A DNA stretch of 48,147 bases from Octopus bimaculoides. Lineage: Eukaryota. The position numbers were made by a program, and so were the translations under genes. Shown here in pieces: positions 2,780-40,862 of this stretch (position 1 is the first letter of the stretch; each line of letters starts with the position of its first letter). The stretch covers positions 111,147,012-111,195,158 of the forward strand of contig NC_068982.1 in assembly GCF_001194135.2 (NCBI RefSeq), written 5' to 3'. The notes beneath the pieces were generated by a model. The model was given only the letters and a program-made list of their open reading frames with translations. It was not told the origin of the DNA and made no database searches.

Positions 2780-3042
2780 AGATGAGAGGCGAAAAGTGGA
2801 GCAAGAAGAAAAGGGAGAGAATACACACACACATACAAGCGCACGCACACACACACGCACACACACACACACTCGTGACATTTAATATACACAGGATTCA
2901 AATGTGAGCTACTAAAACTTTCATGCTCTGTTTGTACAATAGTCGGACGAGCAAGTAAAGACTTCTATGTACTATGGTGTAATCATTCAGACTCAAATAC
3001 AGCATGGCTCCTCTCTGAGATCATATTTATATCCTGTGTATA

Positions 3043-3260
3043 TTCCTTTCAATTATAGGCACAAGGCTGGAAATTTTAGGCGAGTGGGTAAGTCAATTGC
3101 ATCGACTTCAGTGCTTGACTGATACTTATTTTATTGAGCTAGAAAGGATGAAAGACGAATTCGACCTCGGCAGAATTTGAACTCAGTACGTAAAGGTGGA
3201 CGAAATACTGCTAAGTATTTTGTCCGGTGTGATTACAATTCTGCCAACTTGCCGCCTTAA
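3043..3260 (-). mobile_element. tRNA-derived SINE, family D (GGCGGCGAGCTGGCAGAA head), tail type 2
   Basis: Matches copies at 4657 and 27270. B box GAGTTCAAATTC. Flanked by an imperfect 12-bp TSD ATCCTGTGTATA (3031-3042) / ATCCTGTATATA (3261-3272). Confidence 0.85.
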
Positions 3261-3334: not shown

Positions 3335-3480
3335 TATCTATCTCGCTAGCTAACTTTCTGGGTTTCCACACAATCTACATCTACCAAATTCACTCACTAG
3401 GCATTGTTTGACCCGGAGCTATAGCAAAACTAAACTTGATCAATGTACCAAAACAATCACTGAACCCGAAACCAGCTTTG
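3335..3480 (-). mobile_element. Diverged 5' half of family E SINE
   Basis: Reverse complement resembles 27790-27890 (CTATAGC...GTGAGTGAATTTGGTAGA...GGAAAC). Confidence 0.5.
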
Positions 3481-3571
3481 CGCAATATGCGTTCGAGGTG
3501 TCAATGTTCACTGAGTCTTGCAATTCGCATCAGTTCACGCGGATAGCCGCGCTCTTCATCGACGCTCTTTC

Positions 3572-3660
3572 CTTCACCTGATGAGAAGATCGCATCGTTT
3601 TACATCATTTTATTCCTTCTGGAATAATACCAATGTTTTCTTCGAAACATATGTCGGAAG
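3572..3660 (+). ncRNA. Type I hammerhead ribozyme, intact core (HHR1)
   Basis: Stem I CTTC(A)C 3572-3577 / GGAAG 3656-3660. CTGATGA 3578-3584. Stem II GAAGA 3585-3589 / TCTTC 3639-3643, closed by G10.1-C11.1. GAAA 3644-3647. Palindromic stem III ACATATGT 3647-3654. GUC triplet, predicted cleavage after C3655. Confidence 0.75.
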
Positions 3661-4496: not shown

Positions 4497-4656
4497 ACAT
4501 AAAAGTGAGTTTGGAAGGAGGCGGATACCATATTAGCTCTCGATTAAGTTTCTGTTAACGGTTAATCACAACGATCAGTATTTGTCATTCACTTTGAGGG
4601 TGACCAAATTGACGGACCCTCATGAAACTGCACCGACAGTGTTGCAAGGTTACTCT

Positions 4657-4874
4657 AAGGCGGCGAGCTGGCAGAAACGTTAGCACACCGGGCGAAATGC
4701 TTAGCGGTATTTCGTCTGTCTTTACTTTCTGAGCTCAAATTCCGCCGAGGTCGACTTTGTCTTTCATCCTTTTGGGGTCGATAAATTAAGTACCAGCTGC
4801 GTACTGGGGTAGATCTAATCGACTGGCCCCCTCCCCAAAAATTTCGAGCCTTGTGTCTAGATTAGAAAAGAATA
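4657..4874 (+). mobile_element. tRNA-derived SINE, family D, tail type 2
   Basis: GGCGGCGAGCTGGCAGAAACGTTAGCAC head and GCTCAAATTCC B box. 10-bp TSD TTGCAAGGTT at 4642-4651 and 4875-4884. Confidence 0.9.
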
Positions 4875-5399
4875 TTGCAAGGTTGCATTTGCAACAACGA
4901 NNNNNNNNNNNNNNNNNNNNNNNNNNNNNNNNNNNNNNNNNNNNNNNNNNNNNNNNNNNNNNNNNNNNNNNNNNNNNNNNNNNNNNNNNNNNNNNNNNNN
5001 NNNNNNNNNNNNNNNNNNNNNNNNNNNNNNNNNNNNNNNNNNNNNNNNNNNNNNNNNNNNNNNNNNNNNNNNNNNNNNNNNNNNNNNNNNNNNNNNNNNN
5101 NNNNNNNNNNNNNNNNNNNNNNNNNNNNNNNNNNNNNNNNNNNNNNNNNNNNNNNNNNNNNNNNNNNNNNNNNNNNNNNNNNNNNNNNNNNNNNNNNNNN
5201 NNNNNNNNNNNNNNNNNNNNNNNNNNNNNNNNNNNNNNNNNNNNNNNNNNNNNNNNNNNNNNNNNNNNNNNNNNNNNNNNNNNNNNNNNNNNNNNNNNNN
5301 NNNNNNNNNNNNNNNNNNNNNNNNNNNNNNNNNNNNNNNNNNNNNNNNNNNNNNNNNNNNNNNNNNNNNNNNNNNNNNNNNNNNNNNNNNNNNNNNNNN

Positions 5400-8632: not shown

Positions 8633-9412
8633 ATTATACAAATATACACAATCATACGCCTACGCATATAGAATAGCACATGCGCATGGTCATATTCACA
8701 GATTAGTTAATTAGGTCTTTCTAGGGAATTAACACTGTGAGAAGGTCGGACTTGTTCTACTTAGGCTGATGTTTTTCTCTTCTCAGCTCAACGTCACATC
8801 TCAAGTGGCTGTCAACCTTTAAACCTTCTATATTTACAATACTATCGGTGGCAAATCGTTAAGACTTGACGTTAATGCTGCTATGTTTCCCAACGATACT
8901 GTATCACAATGTTGACGGTCACTTCACCTACTTCTGAATATTATTCTCTTTTGAAAGTATCCTAGAATACTGTCTAAAGGAGATCGACTAAGAGAGAGAG
9001 AGAGAGGCTCACAGAGAGAAAGAGGGAGATAGATAAAGGAGAAAGAGAGAATGAGGGCAGATAGACAGGGGAGAGGAAGAGAGACAAAGGGAGAGAGCGA
9101 TATGGGAGAGAGACAGGGGAGAAAGATAAAGAAAATACAGTAAAAGAGATGTTGTTATTGAAACGGAGACAATGAAAGAGAAAGAGAAAGGGGGAGATAT
9201 TTATGCACGAAGATAACACGCTGTTACACTGTATTCGATGAGTTACTGAAAATAACAAGGAAATCTCAGCATTGTAACTGGATTTATTAGAAATAACAGC
9301 AAAATCGCCATCAAATAACACTCAACCTTCTTTAAAAAGCACATTGAATATAGGGCTTTCCTATAAGTAGGTTATCTCCCTTGGCTAGGCGGCGCTCCAT
9401 GTAGATAATTAA

Positions 9413-9420
9413 ACTTCCGG
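9413..9420 (+). promoter_or_regulatory. ETS-type motif ACTTCCGG upstream of the transposon ORF
   Basis: Exact reverse complement of CCGGAAGT, about 40 nt before ATG 9459, followed by CGCCATTG. Function untested. Confidence 0.25.
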
Positions 9421-9458
9421 AGGCTACCCACGCCATTGTTATTGTTTTACGTCTTATC

Positions 9459-10114
9459 ATGGATATAAAGCAGCTTGATGATTCAGCTATCGAAGTACTT
9501 ACTGTGCCTGAGTTAAAGAAATATTTAAGATTATATGGACAGTATGTTACTGGAAGAAAGGCGGACTTGACTGAAAGGTTGAAAGGAATAAAAATTCTGT
9601 CGATGAAGAATGTTAACAAAGTAAATTCATCGGACGATAAGTCTGAAGTATCGGACGATACTTCAGACAGGAATAAGCAGAAGCTTATATCNNNNNNNNN
9701 NNNNNNNNNNNNNNNNNNNNNNNNNNNNNNNNNNNNNNNNNNNNNNNNNNNNNNNNNNNNNNNNNNNNNNNNNNNNNNNNNNNNNNNNNNNNNNNNNNNN
9801 NNNNNNNNNNNNNNNNNNNNNNNNNNNNNNNNNNNNNTTTGTAAGTTGCCGAATTTCACAGATAATGACATAATTACCTCGTGCTACGGATGAAAGTAAA
9901 GCAACAGTTAAGGAGTGGCATATTTTACCACGACAGACACGTACACAGCATCGAATACCACGATGTGAGTGAAAGCTGCTCTCACTGTATTGTCCGGTGT
10001 CTGGTAATCCCTTCGATACCGACATCAAACGAAAAAAAGAATCCTGACCACAGAGTGTGGGTAATTATGTCAAAGGTCACTGGCAATGTGCATTCAGCTG
10101 ATTGCAACTGTTAA
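9459..10114 (+). pseudogene. SAP domain plus partial SWIM zinc-finger protein (transposon accessory ORF), frameshifted and truncated
   Basis: LTVPELKKYLRLYGQYVTGRKADLTERLK fits the SAP consensus. After the gap, KLPNFTDNDI shifts frame to NYLVLRMK...HRVWVIMSKVTGNVHSADCNC*, the CxC start of a SWIM finger. Adding ATAT near 9872 restores D-I-Y-N-Y-L-V. Confidence 0.75.
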
Positions 10115-10434
10115 AGCAAGTCACTGAGCATGCGTACATGTCATACGGGAGAGTTCCAATCAGGGGTGGATAACACCTTATAGGAAAGCCCTATTGCTTT
10201 CTTAGAAACACTGAGTAAGAAAGGCGGGGTGGTTATGATTAGAAATCTTAAGTTTCATAGACATCTGTACCCTTGACGTAATTAATTGTCAGAGAGAATT
10301 AGTGTGACAAAGTGTGTGACAAGGTTCCATCCTTACTTTGATCAACTATAATTCAAAAATTATGCCCTGCTTCGGATGGAGCATGTACATAATCCTTGAA
10401 CTTCTTAAAAATATTAGCTAACAGCTGGAGCATC

Positions 10435-23266: not shown

Positions 23267-24144
23267 TTAGCACATAATAAAACGTTTAAACTTTCCAACC
23301 GTACGAAGCTGCTTGCATCTATTATGTCCTCTACGTAAGTTTCTTCCACAAAGAAATGTATTTAAATACAAGAAATACATTTTAATATTTAAGTTAAAAT
23401 AAACAAAAATAAGATCCATAAGTATTTTATGCTACATAAACTTCCAAATATAACATTATTTAAGGCTGGAATATAAACAATGTAAGTTCTAATAGAAAAC
23501 ACGAAACGAATGTAATTAGCTAATATTATGTTACTGTGAATGATAATATGATATAAAATGATCATAAAAACGAGCTCGTACTTCTATGAGATTCACAGAT
23601 TGGCAATATTGTAATATAAGTAGATGTTTTCCTTACTTATGTTTATCTCTGTTACAACAGCCATGATAGCAGAGTAGTTGATCTATTACTATGGAGTGTT
23701 TGCGAGATAAAAACAGACAGTCGTGTGGATGTAGAAATACCATGATTATTCAGATAGAAATACAGCTAGAGCTAAATCTCGGCTTTAAATCTTTGTTTTT
23801 GAGACTCCTTTCACTGGCTCAAATGGCTCCTATGTCTACATTGCAGGTTAAGTGCACAGCATCTTATTTAGTAATAATATTTCAAATTTGTGTGAAGTAC
23901 AGTTCCATCCTGTCAGAAATACATTATCAAGAGATTGTTTACTATCATCACTGCTGGATATTTGGATTTACTTGTGTCGTATTTCTGACAATGGCGGATA
24001 TTAATTTCATAGCCAAACCTTTTTGATTTGTAGTTGTTGTTCCTTCTGTTCACTCTTAGCTCATGATGAAAAGCATTTTTGTTGTGACAATTGGATCGTG
24101 TAAAATTGTTTCTACTGTAGGCACAAAGTTTGGGATTTCGGGAG

Positions 24145-24312
24145 AGGATTTAAATCGATTACATCGACTCCAGTGCTCAATTGGTATTTATTTTATCGAT
24201 CTCGAAAGGCGAAGTCGACCTCAGCGACATATGAACACAGAACATAAAACCAGGAGAAATGCAACTGAGCATTTTGTCCGGCGTGCCAACACTTCTGCCA
24301 GCCCACTGCCTT
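24145..24312 (-). mobile_element. Diverged family D SINE
   Basis: Reverse complement AAGGCAGTGGGCTGGCAGAAGTGTTGGCACGCCGGAC...GAGGTCGACTT...GATAAAATAA. Confidence 0.75.
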
Positions 24313-24874: not shown

Positions 24875-24943
24875 GAAATCGTCGTAAGTACTATTGACCC
24901 CTCCCACGAAACTGCCTTATGCCAAATATTGAAGCAATTTTAA

Positions 24944-25745
24944 GGAGGCGAGCTGACAGAATCGTTACTGCGCCGGACAAAATATTTAACGGCCTTTCTT
25001 TCGACTTTACGTACTGAGTTCAAACGCCATCTGATTCGACTTTAACATTCATCCTTTCGGGGTCGATAAAATAAGTACTAGTTGAGCACTGAGCTAGATG
25101 TAATCGGGTTACGCTTCACCCCCTCCCACACCACCACCACCACCACCACGAAATCGCTGGCCTACTGCCAAAATCTGAAGCGATTATAATTGTTGTTGTT
25201 GTTGTTGTTGTTGTTGTTAAAGCAGCAGAATCGTTAGTGCATCGGATAAAATGCTTTGCGGCATTTCTTCCGGCTAATTACGTTCTGAGTTCAGATCCTA
25301 CCAAAGTTAACTTTGCTTTCATCCTTCGTCAATATGATAAGCACAAGCTGAGTACTGAGGTCGATGCAATCGACCAGTCACTTCCTGAAATATTTCAGGC
25401 CTTCTGTCTATAGTAGAAAGAGGTATTGTTGATATTAAAATAATTATCATGTGTAAAGTCGGTGAGCTGGCAGGATCGTTGGTGTCGGTAAAATGCCATG
25501 TCGTATTTGCTCTTTATGTACGAAGTTCAAATTTTTTCCTTTCATCTTTCCGGGTCAATAAAATAAAGCATTTGTCAGATATTAGGGTCGCTTAAATAGG
25601 CTAAAATCTATCCTCTGGATCAGAAGAATCCATAGAACGTCAGACAAAACGCCTCACGGTATTTACTGCGGCTCTTAACGTTCTAAGGCTAAATCCCACC
25701 AAGTCAACTTTAGCAGTCATCTTTCTGGAGTAGATAAAATAATAT
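24944..25745 (+). mobile_element. Four consecutive diverged family D SINEs (about 24944-25175, 25221-25425, 25458-25615, 25625-25745)
   Basis: Each retains parts of the GAGCTGGCAGAATCG head, GAGTTCAAAT B box and TTTCATCCTTTCGGGGTCGATAAAATAA central motif. Confidence 0.7.
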
Positions 25746-26175
25746 TTTCTACTCTAAGCACAAGACTCGAAATTTTTAGGGAGGGGCCCAGTCGATTAGA
25801 TCGACCCCAGTACGCGACTGGTAATTAACTTATCGACCCCGAAAGGATGAAAGGCAAAGTCGACCTTGGCGGAATTTGAACTCAGAACGTAGCGGCACAC
25901 GAAATACCACTAAGCATTTCGCCTGGCGTGCTAACGTTTTTTTATTTCTTTACTGCCCACAAGGGGCTACACACAGAGGGGACAAATAAGGACAGATAAA
26001 GGGATTAAGTCGATTATATCGACCCCAGTCCGTAACTGGTACTTATTTAATCGATCTCGAAAGGATGAAAGGCAAAGTCGACCTCGGTGGAATTTGAACT
26101 CAGAACGTAACAGCAGACGAAATACCGCTAAGCATTTCGCCCGGAGTGCTAACGTTTCTGCCAGCTTGAGGCCTT
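25742..26175 (-). mobile_element. Two tandem family D SINEs: 25940-26175 (tail type 1) joined to 5'-clipped 25742-25939 (tail type 2)
   Basis: On the minus strand the first copy ends CCCCTTGTGGGCAGTAAAGAAAT and runs directly into AAACGTTAGCACGCC of the second, which ends TCGACTGGCCCCTCCCTAAAAATTTCGAG...AGTAGAAAATATT. Confidence 0.88.
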
Positions 26176-27245
26176 GGAGAAGATAAAATAATGAACCAGT
26201 CAAGTAGAAATCATTATTGCCGTCACCTAAAGCTTTTGGCCTAGTGCCTTTGTTAAAAGAAAANNNNNNNNNNNNNNNNNNNNNNNNNNNNNNNNNNNNN
26301 NNNNNNNNNNNNNNNNNNNNNNNNNNNNNNNNNNNNNNNNNNNNNNNNNNNNNNNNNNNNNNNNNNNNNNNNNNNNNNNNNNNNNNNNNNNNNNNNNNNN
26401 NNNNNNNNNNNNNNNNNNNNNNNNNNNNNNNNNNNNNNNNNNNNNNNNNNNNNNNNNNNNNNNNNNNNNNNNNNNNNNNNNNNNNNNNNNNNNNNNNNNN
26501 NNNNNNNNNNNNNNNNNNNNNNNNNNNNNNNNNNNNNNNNNNNNNNNNNNNNNNNNNNNNNNNNNNNNNNNNNNNNNNNNNNNNNNNNNNNNNNNNNNNN
26601 NNNNNNNNNNNNNNNNNNNNNNNNNNNNNNNNNNNNNNNNNNNNNNNNNNNNNNNNNNNNNNNNNNNNNNNNNNNNNNNNNNNNNNNNNNNNNNNNNNNN
26701 NNNNNGTGTGCGTGCGTGCGCGCGCTCGTGTTTTGAGCGCTGAAAAATTTAGACCAAATATTTTGTGACGTCAAACGACAGCTGCTGAAGTTTTGTATTT
26801 AATTTTTAAGGTGAGGTGCCAAAGTATGGAAAGACGGACAGTCTTCAGTTTTCACCTTTAAAAGATTCTTCCCTTTTCTTCTTTTCGTTTTTTTTATTGT
26901 TTTTTTTTTTTTTGCTTCGTTCGTCCTTCGCTGACAATAAATAAATAAATACATAAATGTATCAACATGACAGATTCTGTTAGCAAAACAGAGATGAAGG
27001 GTGACATGGAGGTGTCATAGCAACTAACAACTAAGATAAGAAAGACATCAAACTATGTTATAGCAACAGCAGTAACAGCAGTAGTAGTAATAGCAGCAGC
27101 ATCGATACGAACAGCAATAACCACAGCATCGACAGAAATGGAAATACCATGGCAACTGCAACTAAAGCAGTAATAACAGAAACAGTAACACAACTAGATA
27201 AGACCACGTGCAAGCAATTGCTACTTCGCGTTTTGTGTAGTCAAA

Positions 27246-28135
27246 TGCTGTGTGGTAAGAAGCTTGCTTGAAGGCGGCGATCTGGCAGAAACGTTAGCAC
27301 GCCGGGCGAAATACTTAGCAGTATTTCGTCTGCCGCTACGTTCTGAGTTCAAATTCCGCCGAGGTCGACTTTGCTTTTCATCCTTTCGAGGTCGATAAAT
27401 TAAGTACAAGTTACGCACTGGGGTCGATGTAATCCACTTAATCCCTTTGCCTGTCCTTGTTTGTCTCCTCTATGTTTAGCCCCTTGTGGGCAATAAAGAA
27501 ATAAAGAAATAAGAAGCTTGCTTGAAGGCGGCGAGCTGGCAGAAACGTTAGCACGCCGGGCGAAATACTTAGCAGTATTTCGTCTGCCGTTACGTTCTGA
27601 GTTCAAATTCCGTCGAGGTCGACTTTGCCTTTCATCCTTTCGGAGTCGATAAATAAAGTACCAGTTACGGACTGGGGTCGATGTAATCGACTTAATCCCT
27701 TTGTCTGTCCTTGTTTCTCCCCTCTATGTTTAGCCCCTTGTGAGCAATAAAGAAATAAGAAGCTTGCTTCCCAACCACATGGTTTCGGGCTCAGTCCCAC
27801 TGCGTGACACCTTGGGCAAGTGTCTTCTATTATAGCTTCAGGCTGACCAAAGCCTTGTGAGTGGGATGATAGACGGAAATTGAAAGAAGGTAGTCGTGTG
27901 TGTGTGTGTGTGTATGTGTGTGTGGAGATGAGGGTTATTCACACCACCGCCTGACAACCGGCATTATGTTCACATCCCCGTAACTTAGCGGTTCGGCAAA
28001 AGAGACGGATAGAATAAGTACCACACTTTAAAATGATAAGTACTGGGGTCAATTCATTCGATTAAAAATTCTTCAAGGTGATACCCCAGAATGGTCGCAG
28101 TCTAATAACTGAAGCCGATAAAAGGTAAAAGATAT
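27246..28135 (+). mobile_element. Host family E SINE interrupted by the D tandem
   Basis: GCTGTGTGGTAAGAAGCTTGCTT resumes at 27770 as CCCAACCACATGG...CACCTTGGGCAAGTGTCTTC, followed by a short (GT)n and the tail module to AAAAGATA. Confidence 0.88.
27270..27755 (+). mobile_element. Two tandem family D SINEs (27270-27509, 27524-27755), tail type 1, nested in a family E SINE
   Basis: Exact TAAGAAGCTTGCTT at 27256-27269, 27510-27523 and 27756-27769. About 14 substitutions between the two copies by manual comparison. Confidence 0.92.
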
Positions 28136-40488: not shown

Positions 40489-40862
40489 GTGGAAGCGCAA
40501 TGGCCCAGTGGTTAGGGCAGCGGACTCGCGGTCATAGGATCGCGGTTTCGATTCCCAGACCGGGCGTTGTGAGTGTTTATTTAGCGAAAACACCTAAAGC
40601 TCCGGCAGGGGATGGCGGTGAGCCCTGCTGTACTCTTTCACCACAACTTCCTCTCACTCTTTCTTCCTGTTTCTGTTGTGCCTGTAATTCAAAGGGTCAG
40701 CCTTGTCACACTGTGTCACGCTGAATATCCCCGAGAACTACGTTAAGGGTACACGTGTCTGTGGAGTGCTCAGCCACTTGCACGTTAATTTCACGAGCAG
40801 GCTGTTCCGTTGATCGGATCAACTGGAACCCTCGACGTCGTAAGCGACGGAGTGCCAACAAC
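40489..40862 (+). mobile_element. Full-length family A tRNA-derived SINE
   Basis: A box TGGCCCAGTGGTTAG, B box GGTTTCGATTCC, tail GATCAACTGGAACCCTCG...GACGGAGTGCCAACAAC. Perfect 12-bp TSD ATAATTCTTACG at 40477-40488 and 40863-40874. Confidence 0.93.

What the first reader, a model, noticed from the sequence alone, without database searches (positions are those of the whole stretch)
9351..10193. TIR transposon derivative carrying a SAP-SWIM protein gene
Seen: TIRs with a 2-bp TSD-like junction enclose only a promoter-like 5' region, a SAP DNA-binding domain and the first half of a SWIM finger, after which coding similarity stops about 60 nt before the right TIR. Established as I recall it: ISL2EU elements have a second ORF with a YqaJ/lambda-like exonuclease and 2-bp TSDs, while Zisupton has SWIM and SAP but 8-bp TSDs and the opposite domain order. 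An N-terminal SAP in front of this SWIM type may define an uncatalogued cephalopod family whose autonomous parent remains to be found.
Basis: partly seen in the sequence, partly recalled or inferred. Interest (0 to 1): 0.7.

Follow-up and report, generated by a model that had tools for sequence, protein, structure and literature searches.

The report
Truncated ISL2EU transposon copy in octopus
This is a short, dead, internally deleted copy of a known kind of cut-and-paste transposon (ISL2EU, a relative of PIF/Harbinger) in an octopus genome. It keeps only the two ends and the decayed first exon of the element's accessory nuclease gene, so it is real but ordinary.

Summary
A perfect 16-nt terminal inverted repeat (9352-9367 / 10177-10192) is flanked by AT on both sides. 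It encloses a short leader, a SAP domain (Pfam, above threshold) and the front half of a SWIM finger that stops at CxC. A 62-nt tail follows.

It is a non-autonomous ISL2EU element. A longer octopod-like contig (L001) starts at the same terminus. It splices 9 nt after the window's breakpoint into an exon that completes the SWIM finger and continues into a YqaJ/lambda-exonuclease domain. In six Mya arenaria copies and in contig L008, the same SAP-SWIM-YqaJ gene sits convergent with a THAP/HTH/DDE_Tnp_4 transposase. The Mya copies have homologous termini and AT duplications, as published for ISL2EU.

There is no intact SAP-SWIM gene here. Sibling copies show the real gap is about 34 nt, not 146. 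The SAP ORF then stops at 9871-9873 (100 aa), and the three coding pieces lie in three frames.

SAP-SWIM-YqaJ is the usual ISL2EU second protein across molluscs, amphioxus, cnidarians and ticks, so it is not a cephalopod novelty. The octopus family may simply be uncatalogued. No octopus transposase was shown.

The parts
9350..9351 (.). Left target-site duplication, AT
   Evidence: AT lies directly outside both termini. In the homologous Mya arenaria elements, AT flanks both ends in 5 of 6 copies. AT is the published ISL2EU duplication. In this single copy the ATA/TAT palindrome leaves AT versus TA ambiguous; the alignment to the Mya and L001 termini fixes it as AT.
9352..9367 (+). Left terminal inverted repeat, AGGGCTTTCCTATAAG. 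Imperfect similarity to the right end continues to about 9388.
   Evidence: The core CTTTCCnATAA is invariant in five ends from three elements. Logan contig L001 begins exactly at the base homologous to 9352.
9368..9458 (+). Leader / promoter-like region of the accessory gene, with the conserved motif ACTTCCGG at 9413-9420
   Evidence: It aligns with L001 and with the Mya left end. TACTTCCG is shared by the window left end, the L001 left end, both Mya ends and the L008 transposase-side end. A promoter role is inferred, not tested.
9459..9691 (+). Start of the remnant of accessory-gene exon 1: ATG and SAP domain (SAP = 9495-9584), running into the gap
   Evidence: Pfam SAP E=6.5e-6, above the gathering score. 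Identical over these 77 aa to the consensus of the O. bimaculoides sibling copies.
9692..9837 (.). Assembly gap (146 N). The real content is predicted to be about 34 nt encoding (S)PLGEVLPDLKI.
   Evidence: Sibling copies P0001, P0003, P0016, P0017 and P0019 read straight across it. A 34-nt gap puts 9459 and 9838 in one frame.
9838..9873 (+). End of the only continuous ORF: FVSCRISQIMT, then TAA at 9871-9873. The whole ORF is a 100-aa SAP peptide.
   Evidence: frame 9838. The 100-aa sibling proteins P0016 and P0017 end in the same way.
9840..10111 (+). Frame-shifted remnant of the SWIM domain up to CxC: CKLPNFTDNDI in frame 9840, a 4-nt loss at about 9870, then NYLVLRMK...HSADCNC in frame 9839
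   Evidence: tblastn of the spliced L001 protein: 90% identity over 81 aa. blastn: 84% identity over 275 nt. In relatives C183, C193 and H195 are invariant and C185 is nearly invariant; only the first two are present here.
10112..10176 (+). Stop codon, deletion junction, and right subterminal region (the transposase-proximal end of the parent)
   Evidence: Similarity to L001 ends at 10110, 9 nt before L001's exon 1 / intron 1 boundary. The reverse complement aligns with the transposase-side ends of L008 and the Mya element (CCCCTGATTGGAACTCTC, GCATGC).
10177..10192 (-). Right terminal inverted repeat
   Evidence: Sibling gene models P0003 and P0015 read into the same sequence.
10193..10194 (.). 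Right target-site duplication, AT, followed by T
   Evidence: The published target is A|AT|T. P0003's tail (..ESPIVT) back-translates to CCCT-AT-..., consistent with a second copy that has AT at the right junction.

Best explanation
Window 9352-10192 is a non-autonomous, internally deleted member of an ISL2EU family (PHIS / PIF-Harbinger-like superfamily of DDE cut-and-paste transposons) in an Octopus bimaculoides-like genome. It spans 841 positions with the gap; the real length is about 729 bp.

**Parent (inferred from relatives).** The autonomous parent carries two convergent genes between short TIRs. On the left is an accessory protein with SAP, a SWIM finger and a YqaJ/lambda-type exonuclease. 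On the right is a THAP-HTH-DDE_Tnp_4 transposase.

**Deletion (shown by alignment).** One deletion removed everything from the start of intron 1 of the accessory gene to about 65-80 nt from the right terminus. What remains is both termini, the left leader and exon 1.

**Mobility (inferred).** The derivative kept the terminal and subterminal sequences that the transposase needs. Transposase from full-length copies could therefore mobilise it in trans, and it multiplied like a MITE: at least 21 gene models in the species derive from copies. Insertion is at an AT dinucleotide by a 2-nt staggered cut, which gives the AT duplication.

**Coding state (shown).** This copy encodes nothing functional from the SWIM region onward. 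Two further deletions put the three coding pieces in three frames. The longest ORF is a 100-aa SAP peptide.
For: - **Structure in the window.** Perfect TIR, unique pair, AT on both sides. SAP above the Pfam threshold. Half SWIM.
- **Multicopy.** 21 O. bimaculoides UniRef proteins at 49-99% identity. Those that reach the 3' end stop at CNC or CNCTAGKEHx, or read into the right TIR.
- **Parent type.** L001 shares the terminus, leader and exon 1. It has a GT..AG intron at 674-923 right after CNCTAG. Its exon 2 completes CxCx7CxH and carries YqaJ (E=1e-19).
- **Longer copy in the species.** O. bimaculoides P0022/P0024 (LOC106879765) join the same half-SWIM sequence to a complete YqaJ C-terminus.
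- **Pairing with an ISL2EU transposase.** In 6 of 6 Mya loci the 581-aa SAP-SWIM-YqaJ gene is convergent with a 462-521-aa HTH_Tnp_4/DDE_Tnp_4 gene model (THAP recorded, as a weak hit, in four of the six). This lies inside an element of about 6.48 kb whose copies are 99.9% identical. Neighbouring locus tags show the same pairing in Sinanodonta, Mercenaria, Pecten and Solemya, and contig L008 shows it too.
- **Homologous termini.** The Mya TIR TGTCCTTTCCGATAAC has AT duplications in 5 of 6 copies. The CTTTCCnATAA core and subterminal blocks align with both window ends.
- **Literature definition.** ISL2EU has an AT duplication, TIRs of 6-259 bp, a DDE/HTH/THAP transposase plus a YqaJ protein, and occurs in animals only. 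Non-autonomous families of 746-1483 bp exist.
- **Nuclease fold.** The predicted fold of the accessory protein matches lambda exonuclease and LHK-Exo (TM 0.66-0.76). The D..ExK residues are invariant.
Against: - No transposase from an octopus was shown. None appears among the 120 listed hits, none lies in the window, and the O. bimaculoides proteins are not on record for context look-up.
- The TIR starts AG, not the 'usually GG' of Han et al.
- In this one copy the ATA/TAT palindrome allows a TA duplication equally well. No empty site was available.
- The base before the duplication is T, not the preferred A.
- Copy number is known only through gene models, not a genome search.
- The gap content is inferred from siblings, not read.
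- The exact right breakpoint and the relation between the two octopus subfamilies (tails CNC* and CNCTAGKEHx*) could not be resolved without their DNA.
Confidence: 0.9

Rival explanations
1. The derivative is not just junk. Its amplified copies express the 100-aa SAP peptide from the element's own leader. The peptide would bind element or chromosomal DNA and modulate transposition, like truncated P-element repressors, or it has been co-opted by the host.
For: The ATG, the leader with the conserved ACTTCCGG motif and the SAP domain are intact here. They are identical to the sibling consensus over 77 aa. Several copies keep the same 100-aa ORF.
Against: Youth of the copies explains the intact ORF equally well. 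Siblings carry scattered amino-acid changes and deletions in the SAP region. No expression data could be obtained. No selection test is possible without the copies' DNA.
Confidence: 0.06
2. The element is really full-length, and the missing YqaJ and transposase genes are hidden by the assembly (in the gap at 9692-9837, or by a collapse).
For: The window has 19 gaps, and the N length is only an estimate.
Against: The gap lies between SAP and SWIM, where relatives have only 34-58 nt. The deletion junction at about 10111 is in uninterrupted sequence. Independent sibling copies read across the same junction into the right end (P0003, P0015).
Confidence: 0.02
3. It derives from a Zisupton (KDZ) or MULE-type element, superfamilies whose transposases carry SWIM fingers.
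For: A SWIM finger is present. A few distant YqaJ proteins carry PF20700.
Against: The duplication is 2 bp (AT), not 8 bp or 8-9 bp. The SWIM belongs to the YqaJ accessory protein, not to a transposase. The partner gene in all complete relatives is DDE_Tnp_4.
Confidence: 0.01
4. It is a decayed host SAP-domain gene that happens to lie between chance inverted repeats.
For: UniProt lists the copies as 'SAP domain-containing protein'.
Against: The family is multicopy. The TIR is far beyond chance. The termini are homologous to those of active bivalve elements. The gene models need invented introns to join the frames.
Confidence: 0.01

Closest known systems
ISL2EU (IS4EU) transposons of the PHIS superfamily, e.g. 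Repbase ISL2EU-8/10/11/15_CGi of Crassostrea gigas and IS4EU-1_BF of amphioxus (Han et al. 2015, PMC4482050)
   Same: AT duplication, short TIRs, a YqaJ accessory gene in the parent, a THAP/HTH/DDE_Tnp_4 transposase in complete relatives, and animal hosts. Short non-autonomous derivatives are known (e.g. ISL2EU-2_PXyl, 746 bp).
   Different: The TIR begins AG rather than GG. The octopus family is not in that survey, which predates the octopus genome. This copy has neither the transposase nor the YqaJ part.
The active Mya arenaria element found here (L002-L007, about 6.48 kb)
   Same: Homologous termini (CTTTCCGATAA core, subterminal GTTAT/CCCTGA blocks, TACTTCCGG motif), the same SAP-SWIM-YqaJ gene at the left end, and AT duplication.
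   Different: It is complete and its copies are 99.9% identical. Its protein is 43% identical to the octopod parent-type protein (L001). Its first intron is at a different position.
MITE-like deletion derivatives of PIF/Harbinger (Tourist-type)
   Same: A short internally deleted element that keeps only the ends, is presumably moved in trans, and is amplified to many copies.
   Different: 2-bp AT rather than 3-bp TWA duplication. It still carries a recognisable exon remnant, so it is a recent deletion derivative rather than a classic featureless MITE.
Spy elements (sister group of ISL2EU)
   Same: Related DDE transposase lineage and AT-rich targets.
   Different: Spy makes no duplication, inserts in AAATTT and has a single ORF without a YqaJ partner (PMC4122938).
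Zisupton
   Same: A eukaryotic TIR transposon.
   Different: 8-bp duplications (PMC12730594), an unrelated transposase, and no YqaJ partner.
Lambda exonuclease / YqaJ / LHK-Exo (PDB 1avq, 3syy)
   Same: The C-terminal domain of the parent accessory protein has this fold and the D..ExK catalytic residues.
   Different: In the transposon protein it is fused to SAP and SWIM. It is absent altogether from the window copy.

Membership tests
ISL2EU | 2-bp target-site duplication, typically AT (target A|AT|T) | tested here: met
   AT at 9350-9351 and 10193-10194, followed by T. The base before it is T, not A. AT is found in 5 of 6 homologous Mya copies. The single-copy ambiguity with TA is resolved by alignment of the termini.
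ISL2EU | Terminal inverted repeats of 6-259 bp, usually starting GG | tested here: met
   16-nt perfect TIR. It starts AG here and in L001, and TG in Mya, so the 'usually GG' tendency is not followed.
ISL2EU | [quoted passage not shown] | tested here: met
   Absent from this truncated copy. The parent-type contig L001, with the same terminus and exon 1, continues into YqaJ (PF09588 E=1e-19). O. bimaculoides P0022/P0024 do the same.
ISL2EU | DDE transposase of the DDE_Tnp_4 type with HTH and THAP domains | tested here: inconclusive
   None in the window, and none shown for any octopus. It is present next to the homologous accessory gene in Mya (6 of 6 loci), in L008 and, by neighbouring locus tags, in four more bivalves.
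ISL2EU | Restricted to animals | tested here: met
   Named hits are molluscs, amphioxus, cnidarians and arthropods (ticks and a beetle).
ISL2EU | Match to a catalogued Repbase/Dfam family | not testable with these tools
   Neither library is available. No held paper mentions ISL2EU together with octopus.
Zisupton | 8-bp target-site duplication | tested here: not met
   The 8 bases outside the two ends differ (TTGAATAT versus ATTGCTTT). The 8-bp rule comes from PMC12730594.
SWIM zinc finger | CxCxnCxH metal-binding signature | tested here: not met
   The window copy stops after CxC (10103-10111). The parent L001 has C-N-C-x7-C-N-H. Three of the four residues are invariant and the second cysteine is nearly invariant in 14 relatives. 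Pfam SWIM is only weak, in 3 of 14. In the model the strands precede CxC and CxH starts a helix.
SAP domain | Pfam PF02037 above the gathering score | tested here: met
   26.1 bits against 23.9. 12 of 14 full-length relatives also match. The profile also matches the Tho1 and MKL1 SAP structures.
MITE (non-autonomous TIR element) | Short, no transposase, ends shared with an autonomous element, many copies | tested here: inconclusive
   About 729 bp, no transposase, ends homologous to complete elements, and at least 21 copies seen through gene models. The true copy number, and an autonomous octopus partner with identical ends, were not obtained.

The most novel reading that the evidence does not exclude
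The octopus genome has amplified a deletion derivative that keeps the element's own promoter and a 100-aa SAP DNA-binding peptide. This peptide could act as a self-encoded dominant-negative regulator of ISL2EU transposition, as KP repressors do for P elements. That would also give the first handle on what the SAP-SWIM-YqaJ accessory protein does; its function is stated to be unknown in the literature (PMC4482050).
Probability: 0.06. Interest if true: 0.5.

Novelty: new member of a known kind. Interest (0 to 1): 0.2.

Why it matters
**Annotation.**
- At least 21 UniProt 'SAP domain-containing proteins' of O. bimaculoides are remnants of this transposon.
- Many of them are stitched together with invented introns; one is fused to an unrelated Kazal-domain gene.
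- They should be masked as repeats rather than counted as genes.

**Transposon biology (modest).**
- ISL2EU is present and was recently amplified in an octopod.
- The terminal CTTTCCGATAA core is conserved between cephalopod and bivalve elements.
- The ISL2EU accessory protein has a conserved three-part build, SAP, SWIM and lambda-type exonuclease, across several animal phyla. The open papers I could search describe it only as a YqaJ protein.

**Overall.** It opens no new question by itself.

Tried and rejected
- **Reads.** I did not try to reach read data by another route.
- **Context of octopus copies.** O. bimaculoides proteins P0024 and P0016 are not on record in the look-up of encoding contigs. 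No flanks of other octopus copies, and no octopus full-length element, could be fetched.
- **Octopus transposase.** A search with the Mya transposase gave 506 hits, but none of the 120 listed is from a cephalopod.
- **Second copy in the window.** tblastn with the transposase and the YqaJ part, blastn with L001, and a self-comparison of the window found nothing beyond the element itself. They also found no paralogous empty site.
- **Pfam on the half SWIM piece alone.** Nothing.
- **Literature.** No held paper combines ISL2EU with octopus or with 'SAP domain'. A broader four-term search was uninformative.
- **Other long ORFs of the window.** No Pfam families and no tRNAs.
- **Whole-protein fold search.** It recovered only the nuclease domain; the SWIM region gave no PDB match.
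- **THAP1-type motif.** I considered and rejected reading the TIR's GGGC as a THAP1-type binding motif, because it is not conserved in L001 or Mya.
- **Unused.** The sensitive representative-protein search was not used. The word-based search already reached other phyla.
Full report
**1. What is in the sequence**

The window reads ...ATTGAAT AT AGGGCTTTCCTATAAG... at 9343-9367 and ...CTTATAGGAAAGCCCT AT TGCTTTC at 10177-10201. The repeat finder reports arms 9350-9367 and 10177-10194, 18 nt and 100% complementary.

Between the arms lie, in order:
- a 91-nt leader;
- an ATG at 9459 that opens MDIKQLDDSAIEVLTVPELKKYLRLYGQYVTGRKADLTERLKG..., which scores above Pfam's gathering threshold for SAP (26.1 against 23.9 bits);
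- the assembly gap at 9692-9837;
- sequence which, in two different frames, reads CKLPNFTDNDI and then NYLVLRMKVKQQLRSGIFYHDRHVHSIEYHDVSESCSHCIVRCLVIPSIPTSNEKKNPDHRVWVIMSKVTGNVHSADCNC, followed by TAA at 10112-10114;
- 62 nt that lead to the right repeat.

**2. The gap, which was to be tested first**

I used relatives instead.

The protein search returned 21 Octopus bimaculoides UniRef entries at 49-99% identity. These are gene models on other copies of the same element. This also identifies the source organism as O. bimaculoides or something very close to it.

Five of them (P0001, P0003, P0016, P0017, P0019) read without interruption ...NKQKLISPLGEVLPDLKIFVSCRISQIM(T*). The window stops at ...QKLI(S) on the left of the gap and resumes with FVSCRISQIMT* in frame 9838.

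Three things follow:
- The two sides are colinear and in the same orientation.
- The real missing stretch is about 34 nt rather than 146. With 34 nt, the ATG at 9459 and frame 9838 fall into one frame.
- The ORF then ends at TAA 9871-9873 after 100 codons.

The 144-aa ORF 9459..9893 listed mechanically is a product of the arbitrary N length.

**3. A longer relative shows what was lost**

One hit, P0006, comes from a 1,990-bp Logan contig, L001 (run ERR12120951). Its features are:
- Its first base aligns with window 9352. Its first 16 bases are AGCACTTTCCGATAAG, against AGGGCTTTCCTATAAG in the window. The leader and exon follow at 74-84% nucleotide identity.
- A contig of a de Bruijn assembly that starts exactly at the element's first base is what one expects of a repeat.
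- In L001 the ORF runs from SAP, in frame, through ...PDPNLLNSDWAKDLCKLPNFTENDVYNYLVLRMK... to ...HSADCNCTAG.
- There it meets GTAAG. A 250-nt intron ends in TTTTTTTCAG at 923.
- The next exon reads (G)QGEACNHIGALL..., which completes a C-x-C-x7-C-x-H SWIM signature.
- It continues for about 350 residues into a YqaJ domain (PF09588, E=1e-19; Viral_alk_exo, E=5e-17) until the contig ends.

Comparison with L001 shows three lesions in the window copy:
- a 25-nt deletion inside the gap region, inferred from the siblings;
- a 4-nt deletion at about 9870 (DNDI-NYLV instead of DNDxYNYLV);
- a large deletion that starts at 10111, 9 nt before L001's exon 1 / intron 1 boundary.

The first two lesions place SAP, CKLPNF... 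and NYLV...CNC in three different frames. There is no intact SAP-SWIM gene here. The UniProt models that join these pieces do so with invented introns.

O. bimaculoides itself has at least one longer copy. P0022 joins the same half-SWIM sequence to a YqaJ domain. That domain is identical to P0024, XP_014784938.1 / LOC106879765, which runs to a natural C-terminus.

**4. Which transposon it is**

A search with the spliced L001 protein found full-length proteins of 565-680 aa with the same order of domains. They occur in bivalves, gastropods, amphioxus, a soft coral and ticks, and many are multicopy. In an alignment of 14 of them:
- three of the four SWIM ligands are invariant and the second cysteine is nearly invariant, and the D...E-x-K nuclease residues are invariant;
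- YqaJ is found in 14 of 14, SAP in 12 of 14, and Pfam SWIM weakly in 3 of 14.

I fetched the genomic context of the Mya arenaria member at six loci.
- In every one the 581-aa gene is convergent with a 462-521-aa gene model carrying HTH_Tnp_4 and DDE_Tnp_4.
- THAP is recorded, as a weak hit, in four of the six.
- The six loci share a block of about 6.48 kb at 99.9% identity.
- That block ends in the inverted repeat TGTCCTTTCCGATAAC.
- AT flanks both sides in five of the six copies. Two tandem copies share a single AT.

The same gene pair appears elsewhere:
- as neighbouring locus tags in Sinanodonta (ACJMK2_008524/5), Mercenaria (LOC123556116/7), Pecten (LOC117331294/5) and Solemya (013013/4);
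- without introns, on a 4.3-kb Logan contig, L008.

This is the published definition of ISL2EU (Han et al. 2015, PMC4482050; Han et al. 2014, PMC4122938; PMC9179366):
- an AT duplication (target A|AT|T);
- TIRs of 6-259 bp;
- animal hosts only;
- about 4.8 kb on average, with short non-autonomous families also listed.

**5. The window's ends are homologous to those of complete elements**

The core CTTTCCnATAA at element positions 5-15 is invariant in the window's two ends, the L001 start and both Mya ends. A TTA block follows at position 21-23. This alignment sets the first base of the element at 9352 and the duplication as AT. The window alone cannot do this, because ATA...TAT is palindromic.

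The reverse complement of the window's right 80 nt aligns with the transposase-side ends of L008 and Mya: CCCCTGATTGGAACTCTC, then GCATGC. The tail after the stop codon is therefore the parent's transposase-proximal terminus.

The motif TACTTCCG(G) sits 60-90 nt inside both ends of complete elements, and inside the window's left end at 9413-9420. It is missing from the window's right end, where the deletion removed it. From general knowledge this resembles an ETS-type core promoter element. That reading is an inference.

**6. How it most likely works**

- *Shown:* the copy has both termini, no transposase and no nuclease domain.
- *Inferred:* it is moved in trans by the THAP-HTH-DDE transposase of full-length relatives. 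That enzyme would recognise the conserved terminal and subterminal blocks and insert at AT with a 2-nt stagger.
- *Inferred from the many near-identical gene models:* the deletion derivative was amplified recently. The window copy's SAP region is identical to the sibling consensus, and its SWIM region differs at two or three residues.

The accessory protein of the parent has this build:
- a SAP DNA-binding module whose profile also matches the Tho1 and MKL1 SAP structures;
- a SWIM domain predicted as two helices and four strands ending in CxC, with CxH at the start of the following helix (model pLDDT 82.5);
- a lambda-exonuclease-like domain (TM 0.66-0.76 to 3syy, 1avq and other lambda exonuclease entries).

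Its role in transposition is stated to be unknown (PMC4482050). A reasonable guess is 5'-3' resection of the broken donor or target ends. That is speculation, and it does not bear on this truncated copy.

**7. Comparison and novelty**

- The element meets the testable ISL2EU criteria, apart from the 'usually GG' start of the TIR.
- A transposase has not been shown for an octopus.
- Zisupton is excluded by its 8-bp duplication and by the nature of the partner gene.
That arrangement is the norm for the ISL2EU accessory protein across phyla.
- The octopus family may well be absent from the literature I could search. Repbase and Dfam could not be consulted.

I therefore rate it a new member of a known kind, of low interest. 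Its main practical consequence is that a set of O. bimaculoides 'SAP domain-containing proteins' are transposon remnants.

**8. Limits**

- There was no read evidence.
- No flanks of other octopus copies could be fetched.
- No empty site was available.
- The exact right breakpoint is uncertain.
- It is also unclear whether the second octopus subfamily (P0008, P0011, P0013, ending CNCTAGKEHx) carries the same deletion or is simply exon 1 of fuller copies.

Noticed in passing
window 3455-3585 (-): A lone 5.8S rRNA match (RF00002, 60.8 bits against a gathering score of 42, full model length but with internal losses). No 18S or 28S match lies beside it. It is probably an orphan rDNA fragment or pseudogene in a repeat-rich region.
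   Followed up: partly
window 3040-3260, 4646-4876, 24100-24312, 24939-25112, 25225-25420, 25738-26179, 27256-27769: At least nine copies, on both strands and 70-92% identical, of a 170-250-bp repeat. They include a 254-bp unit in tandem twice at 27256-27758. It looks like an abundant SINE-type element, but ARAGORN finds no tRNA-like head.
   Followed up: partly
window 10562-10752, 11792-11964, 40490-40672: A second repeat family of about 180 bp (82-88% identical, three copies). It begins about 370 nt downstream of the ISL2EU remnant.
   Followed up: no
window, whole: There are 19 runs of N (10-864 nt), most bordered by microsatellites (AC, AT, ATAC, GA). Many listed long ORFs are only read-through of N or of simple repeats. 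No ORF outside the element hits Pfam.
   Followed up: partly
window 8974-9200: A purine-rich (GA/GGGAGA) low-complexity tract lies just upstream of the insertion site. The element itself sits in an AT-rich patch.
   Followed up: no
L003 16390-16400 (Mya arenaria CP111013.1): Two complete 6.48-kb ISL2EU copies lie head to tail and share a single AT between them. In L006 the right junction reads TG instead of AT.
   Followed up: no
L004 9916-16395 and the five other Mya loci: The Mya arenaria ISL2EU family is 99.9% identical between copies on different chromosomes and has gene models for both genes at every locus. It is very probably active now.
   Followed up: partly
L008 (Logan SRR14492784, 4271 bp): An ISL2EU element whose transposase and SAP-SWIM-YqaJ genes both lack introns, unlike the Mya and octopod copies. 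The source organism is unknown.
   Followed up: no
UniProt A0A0L8I7X3_OCTBM (P0018) and A0A0L8HQJ3_OCTBM (P0020): These are chimeric gene models in which the transposon's SAP or SWIM remnant is spliced to unrelated sequence (a Kazal-domain protein; a lysine-rich N-terminus). This suggests copies inside or next to host genes, or annotation artefacts.
   Followed up: no
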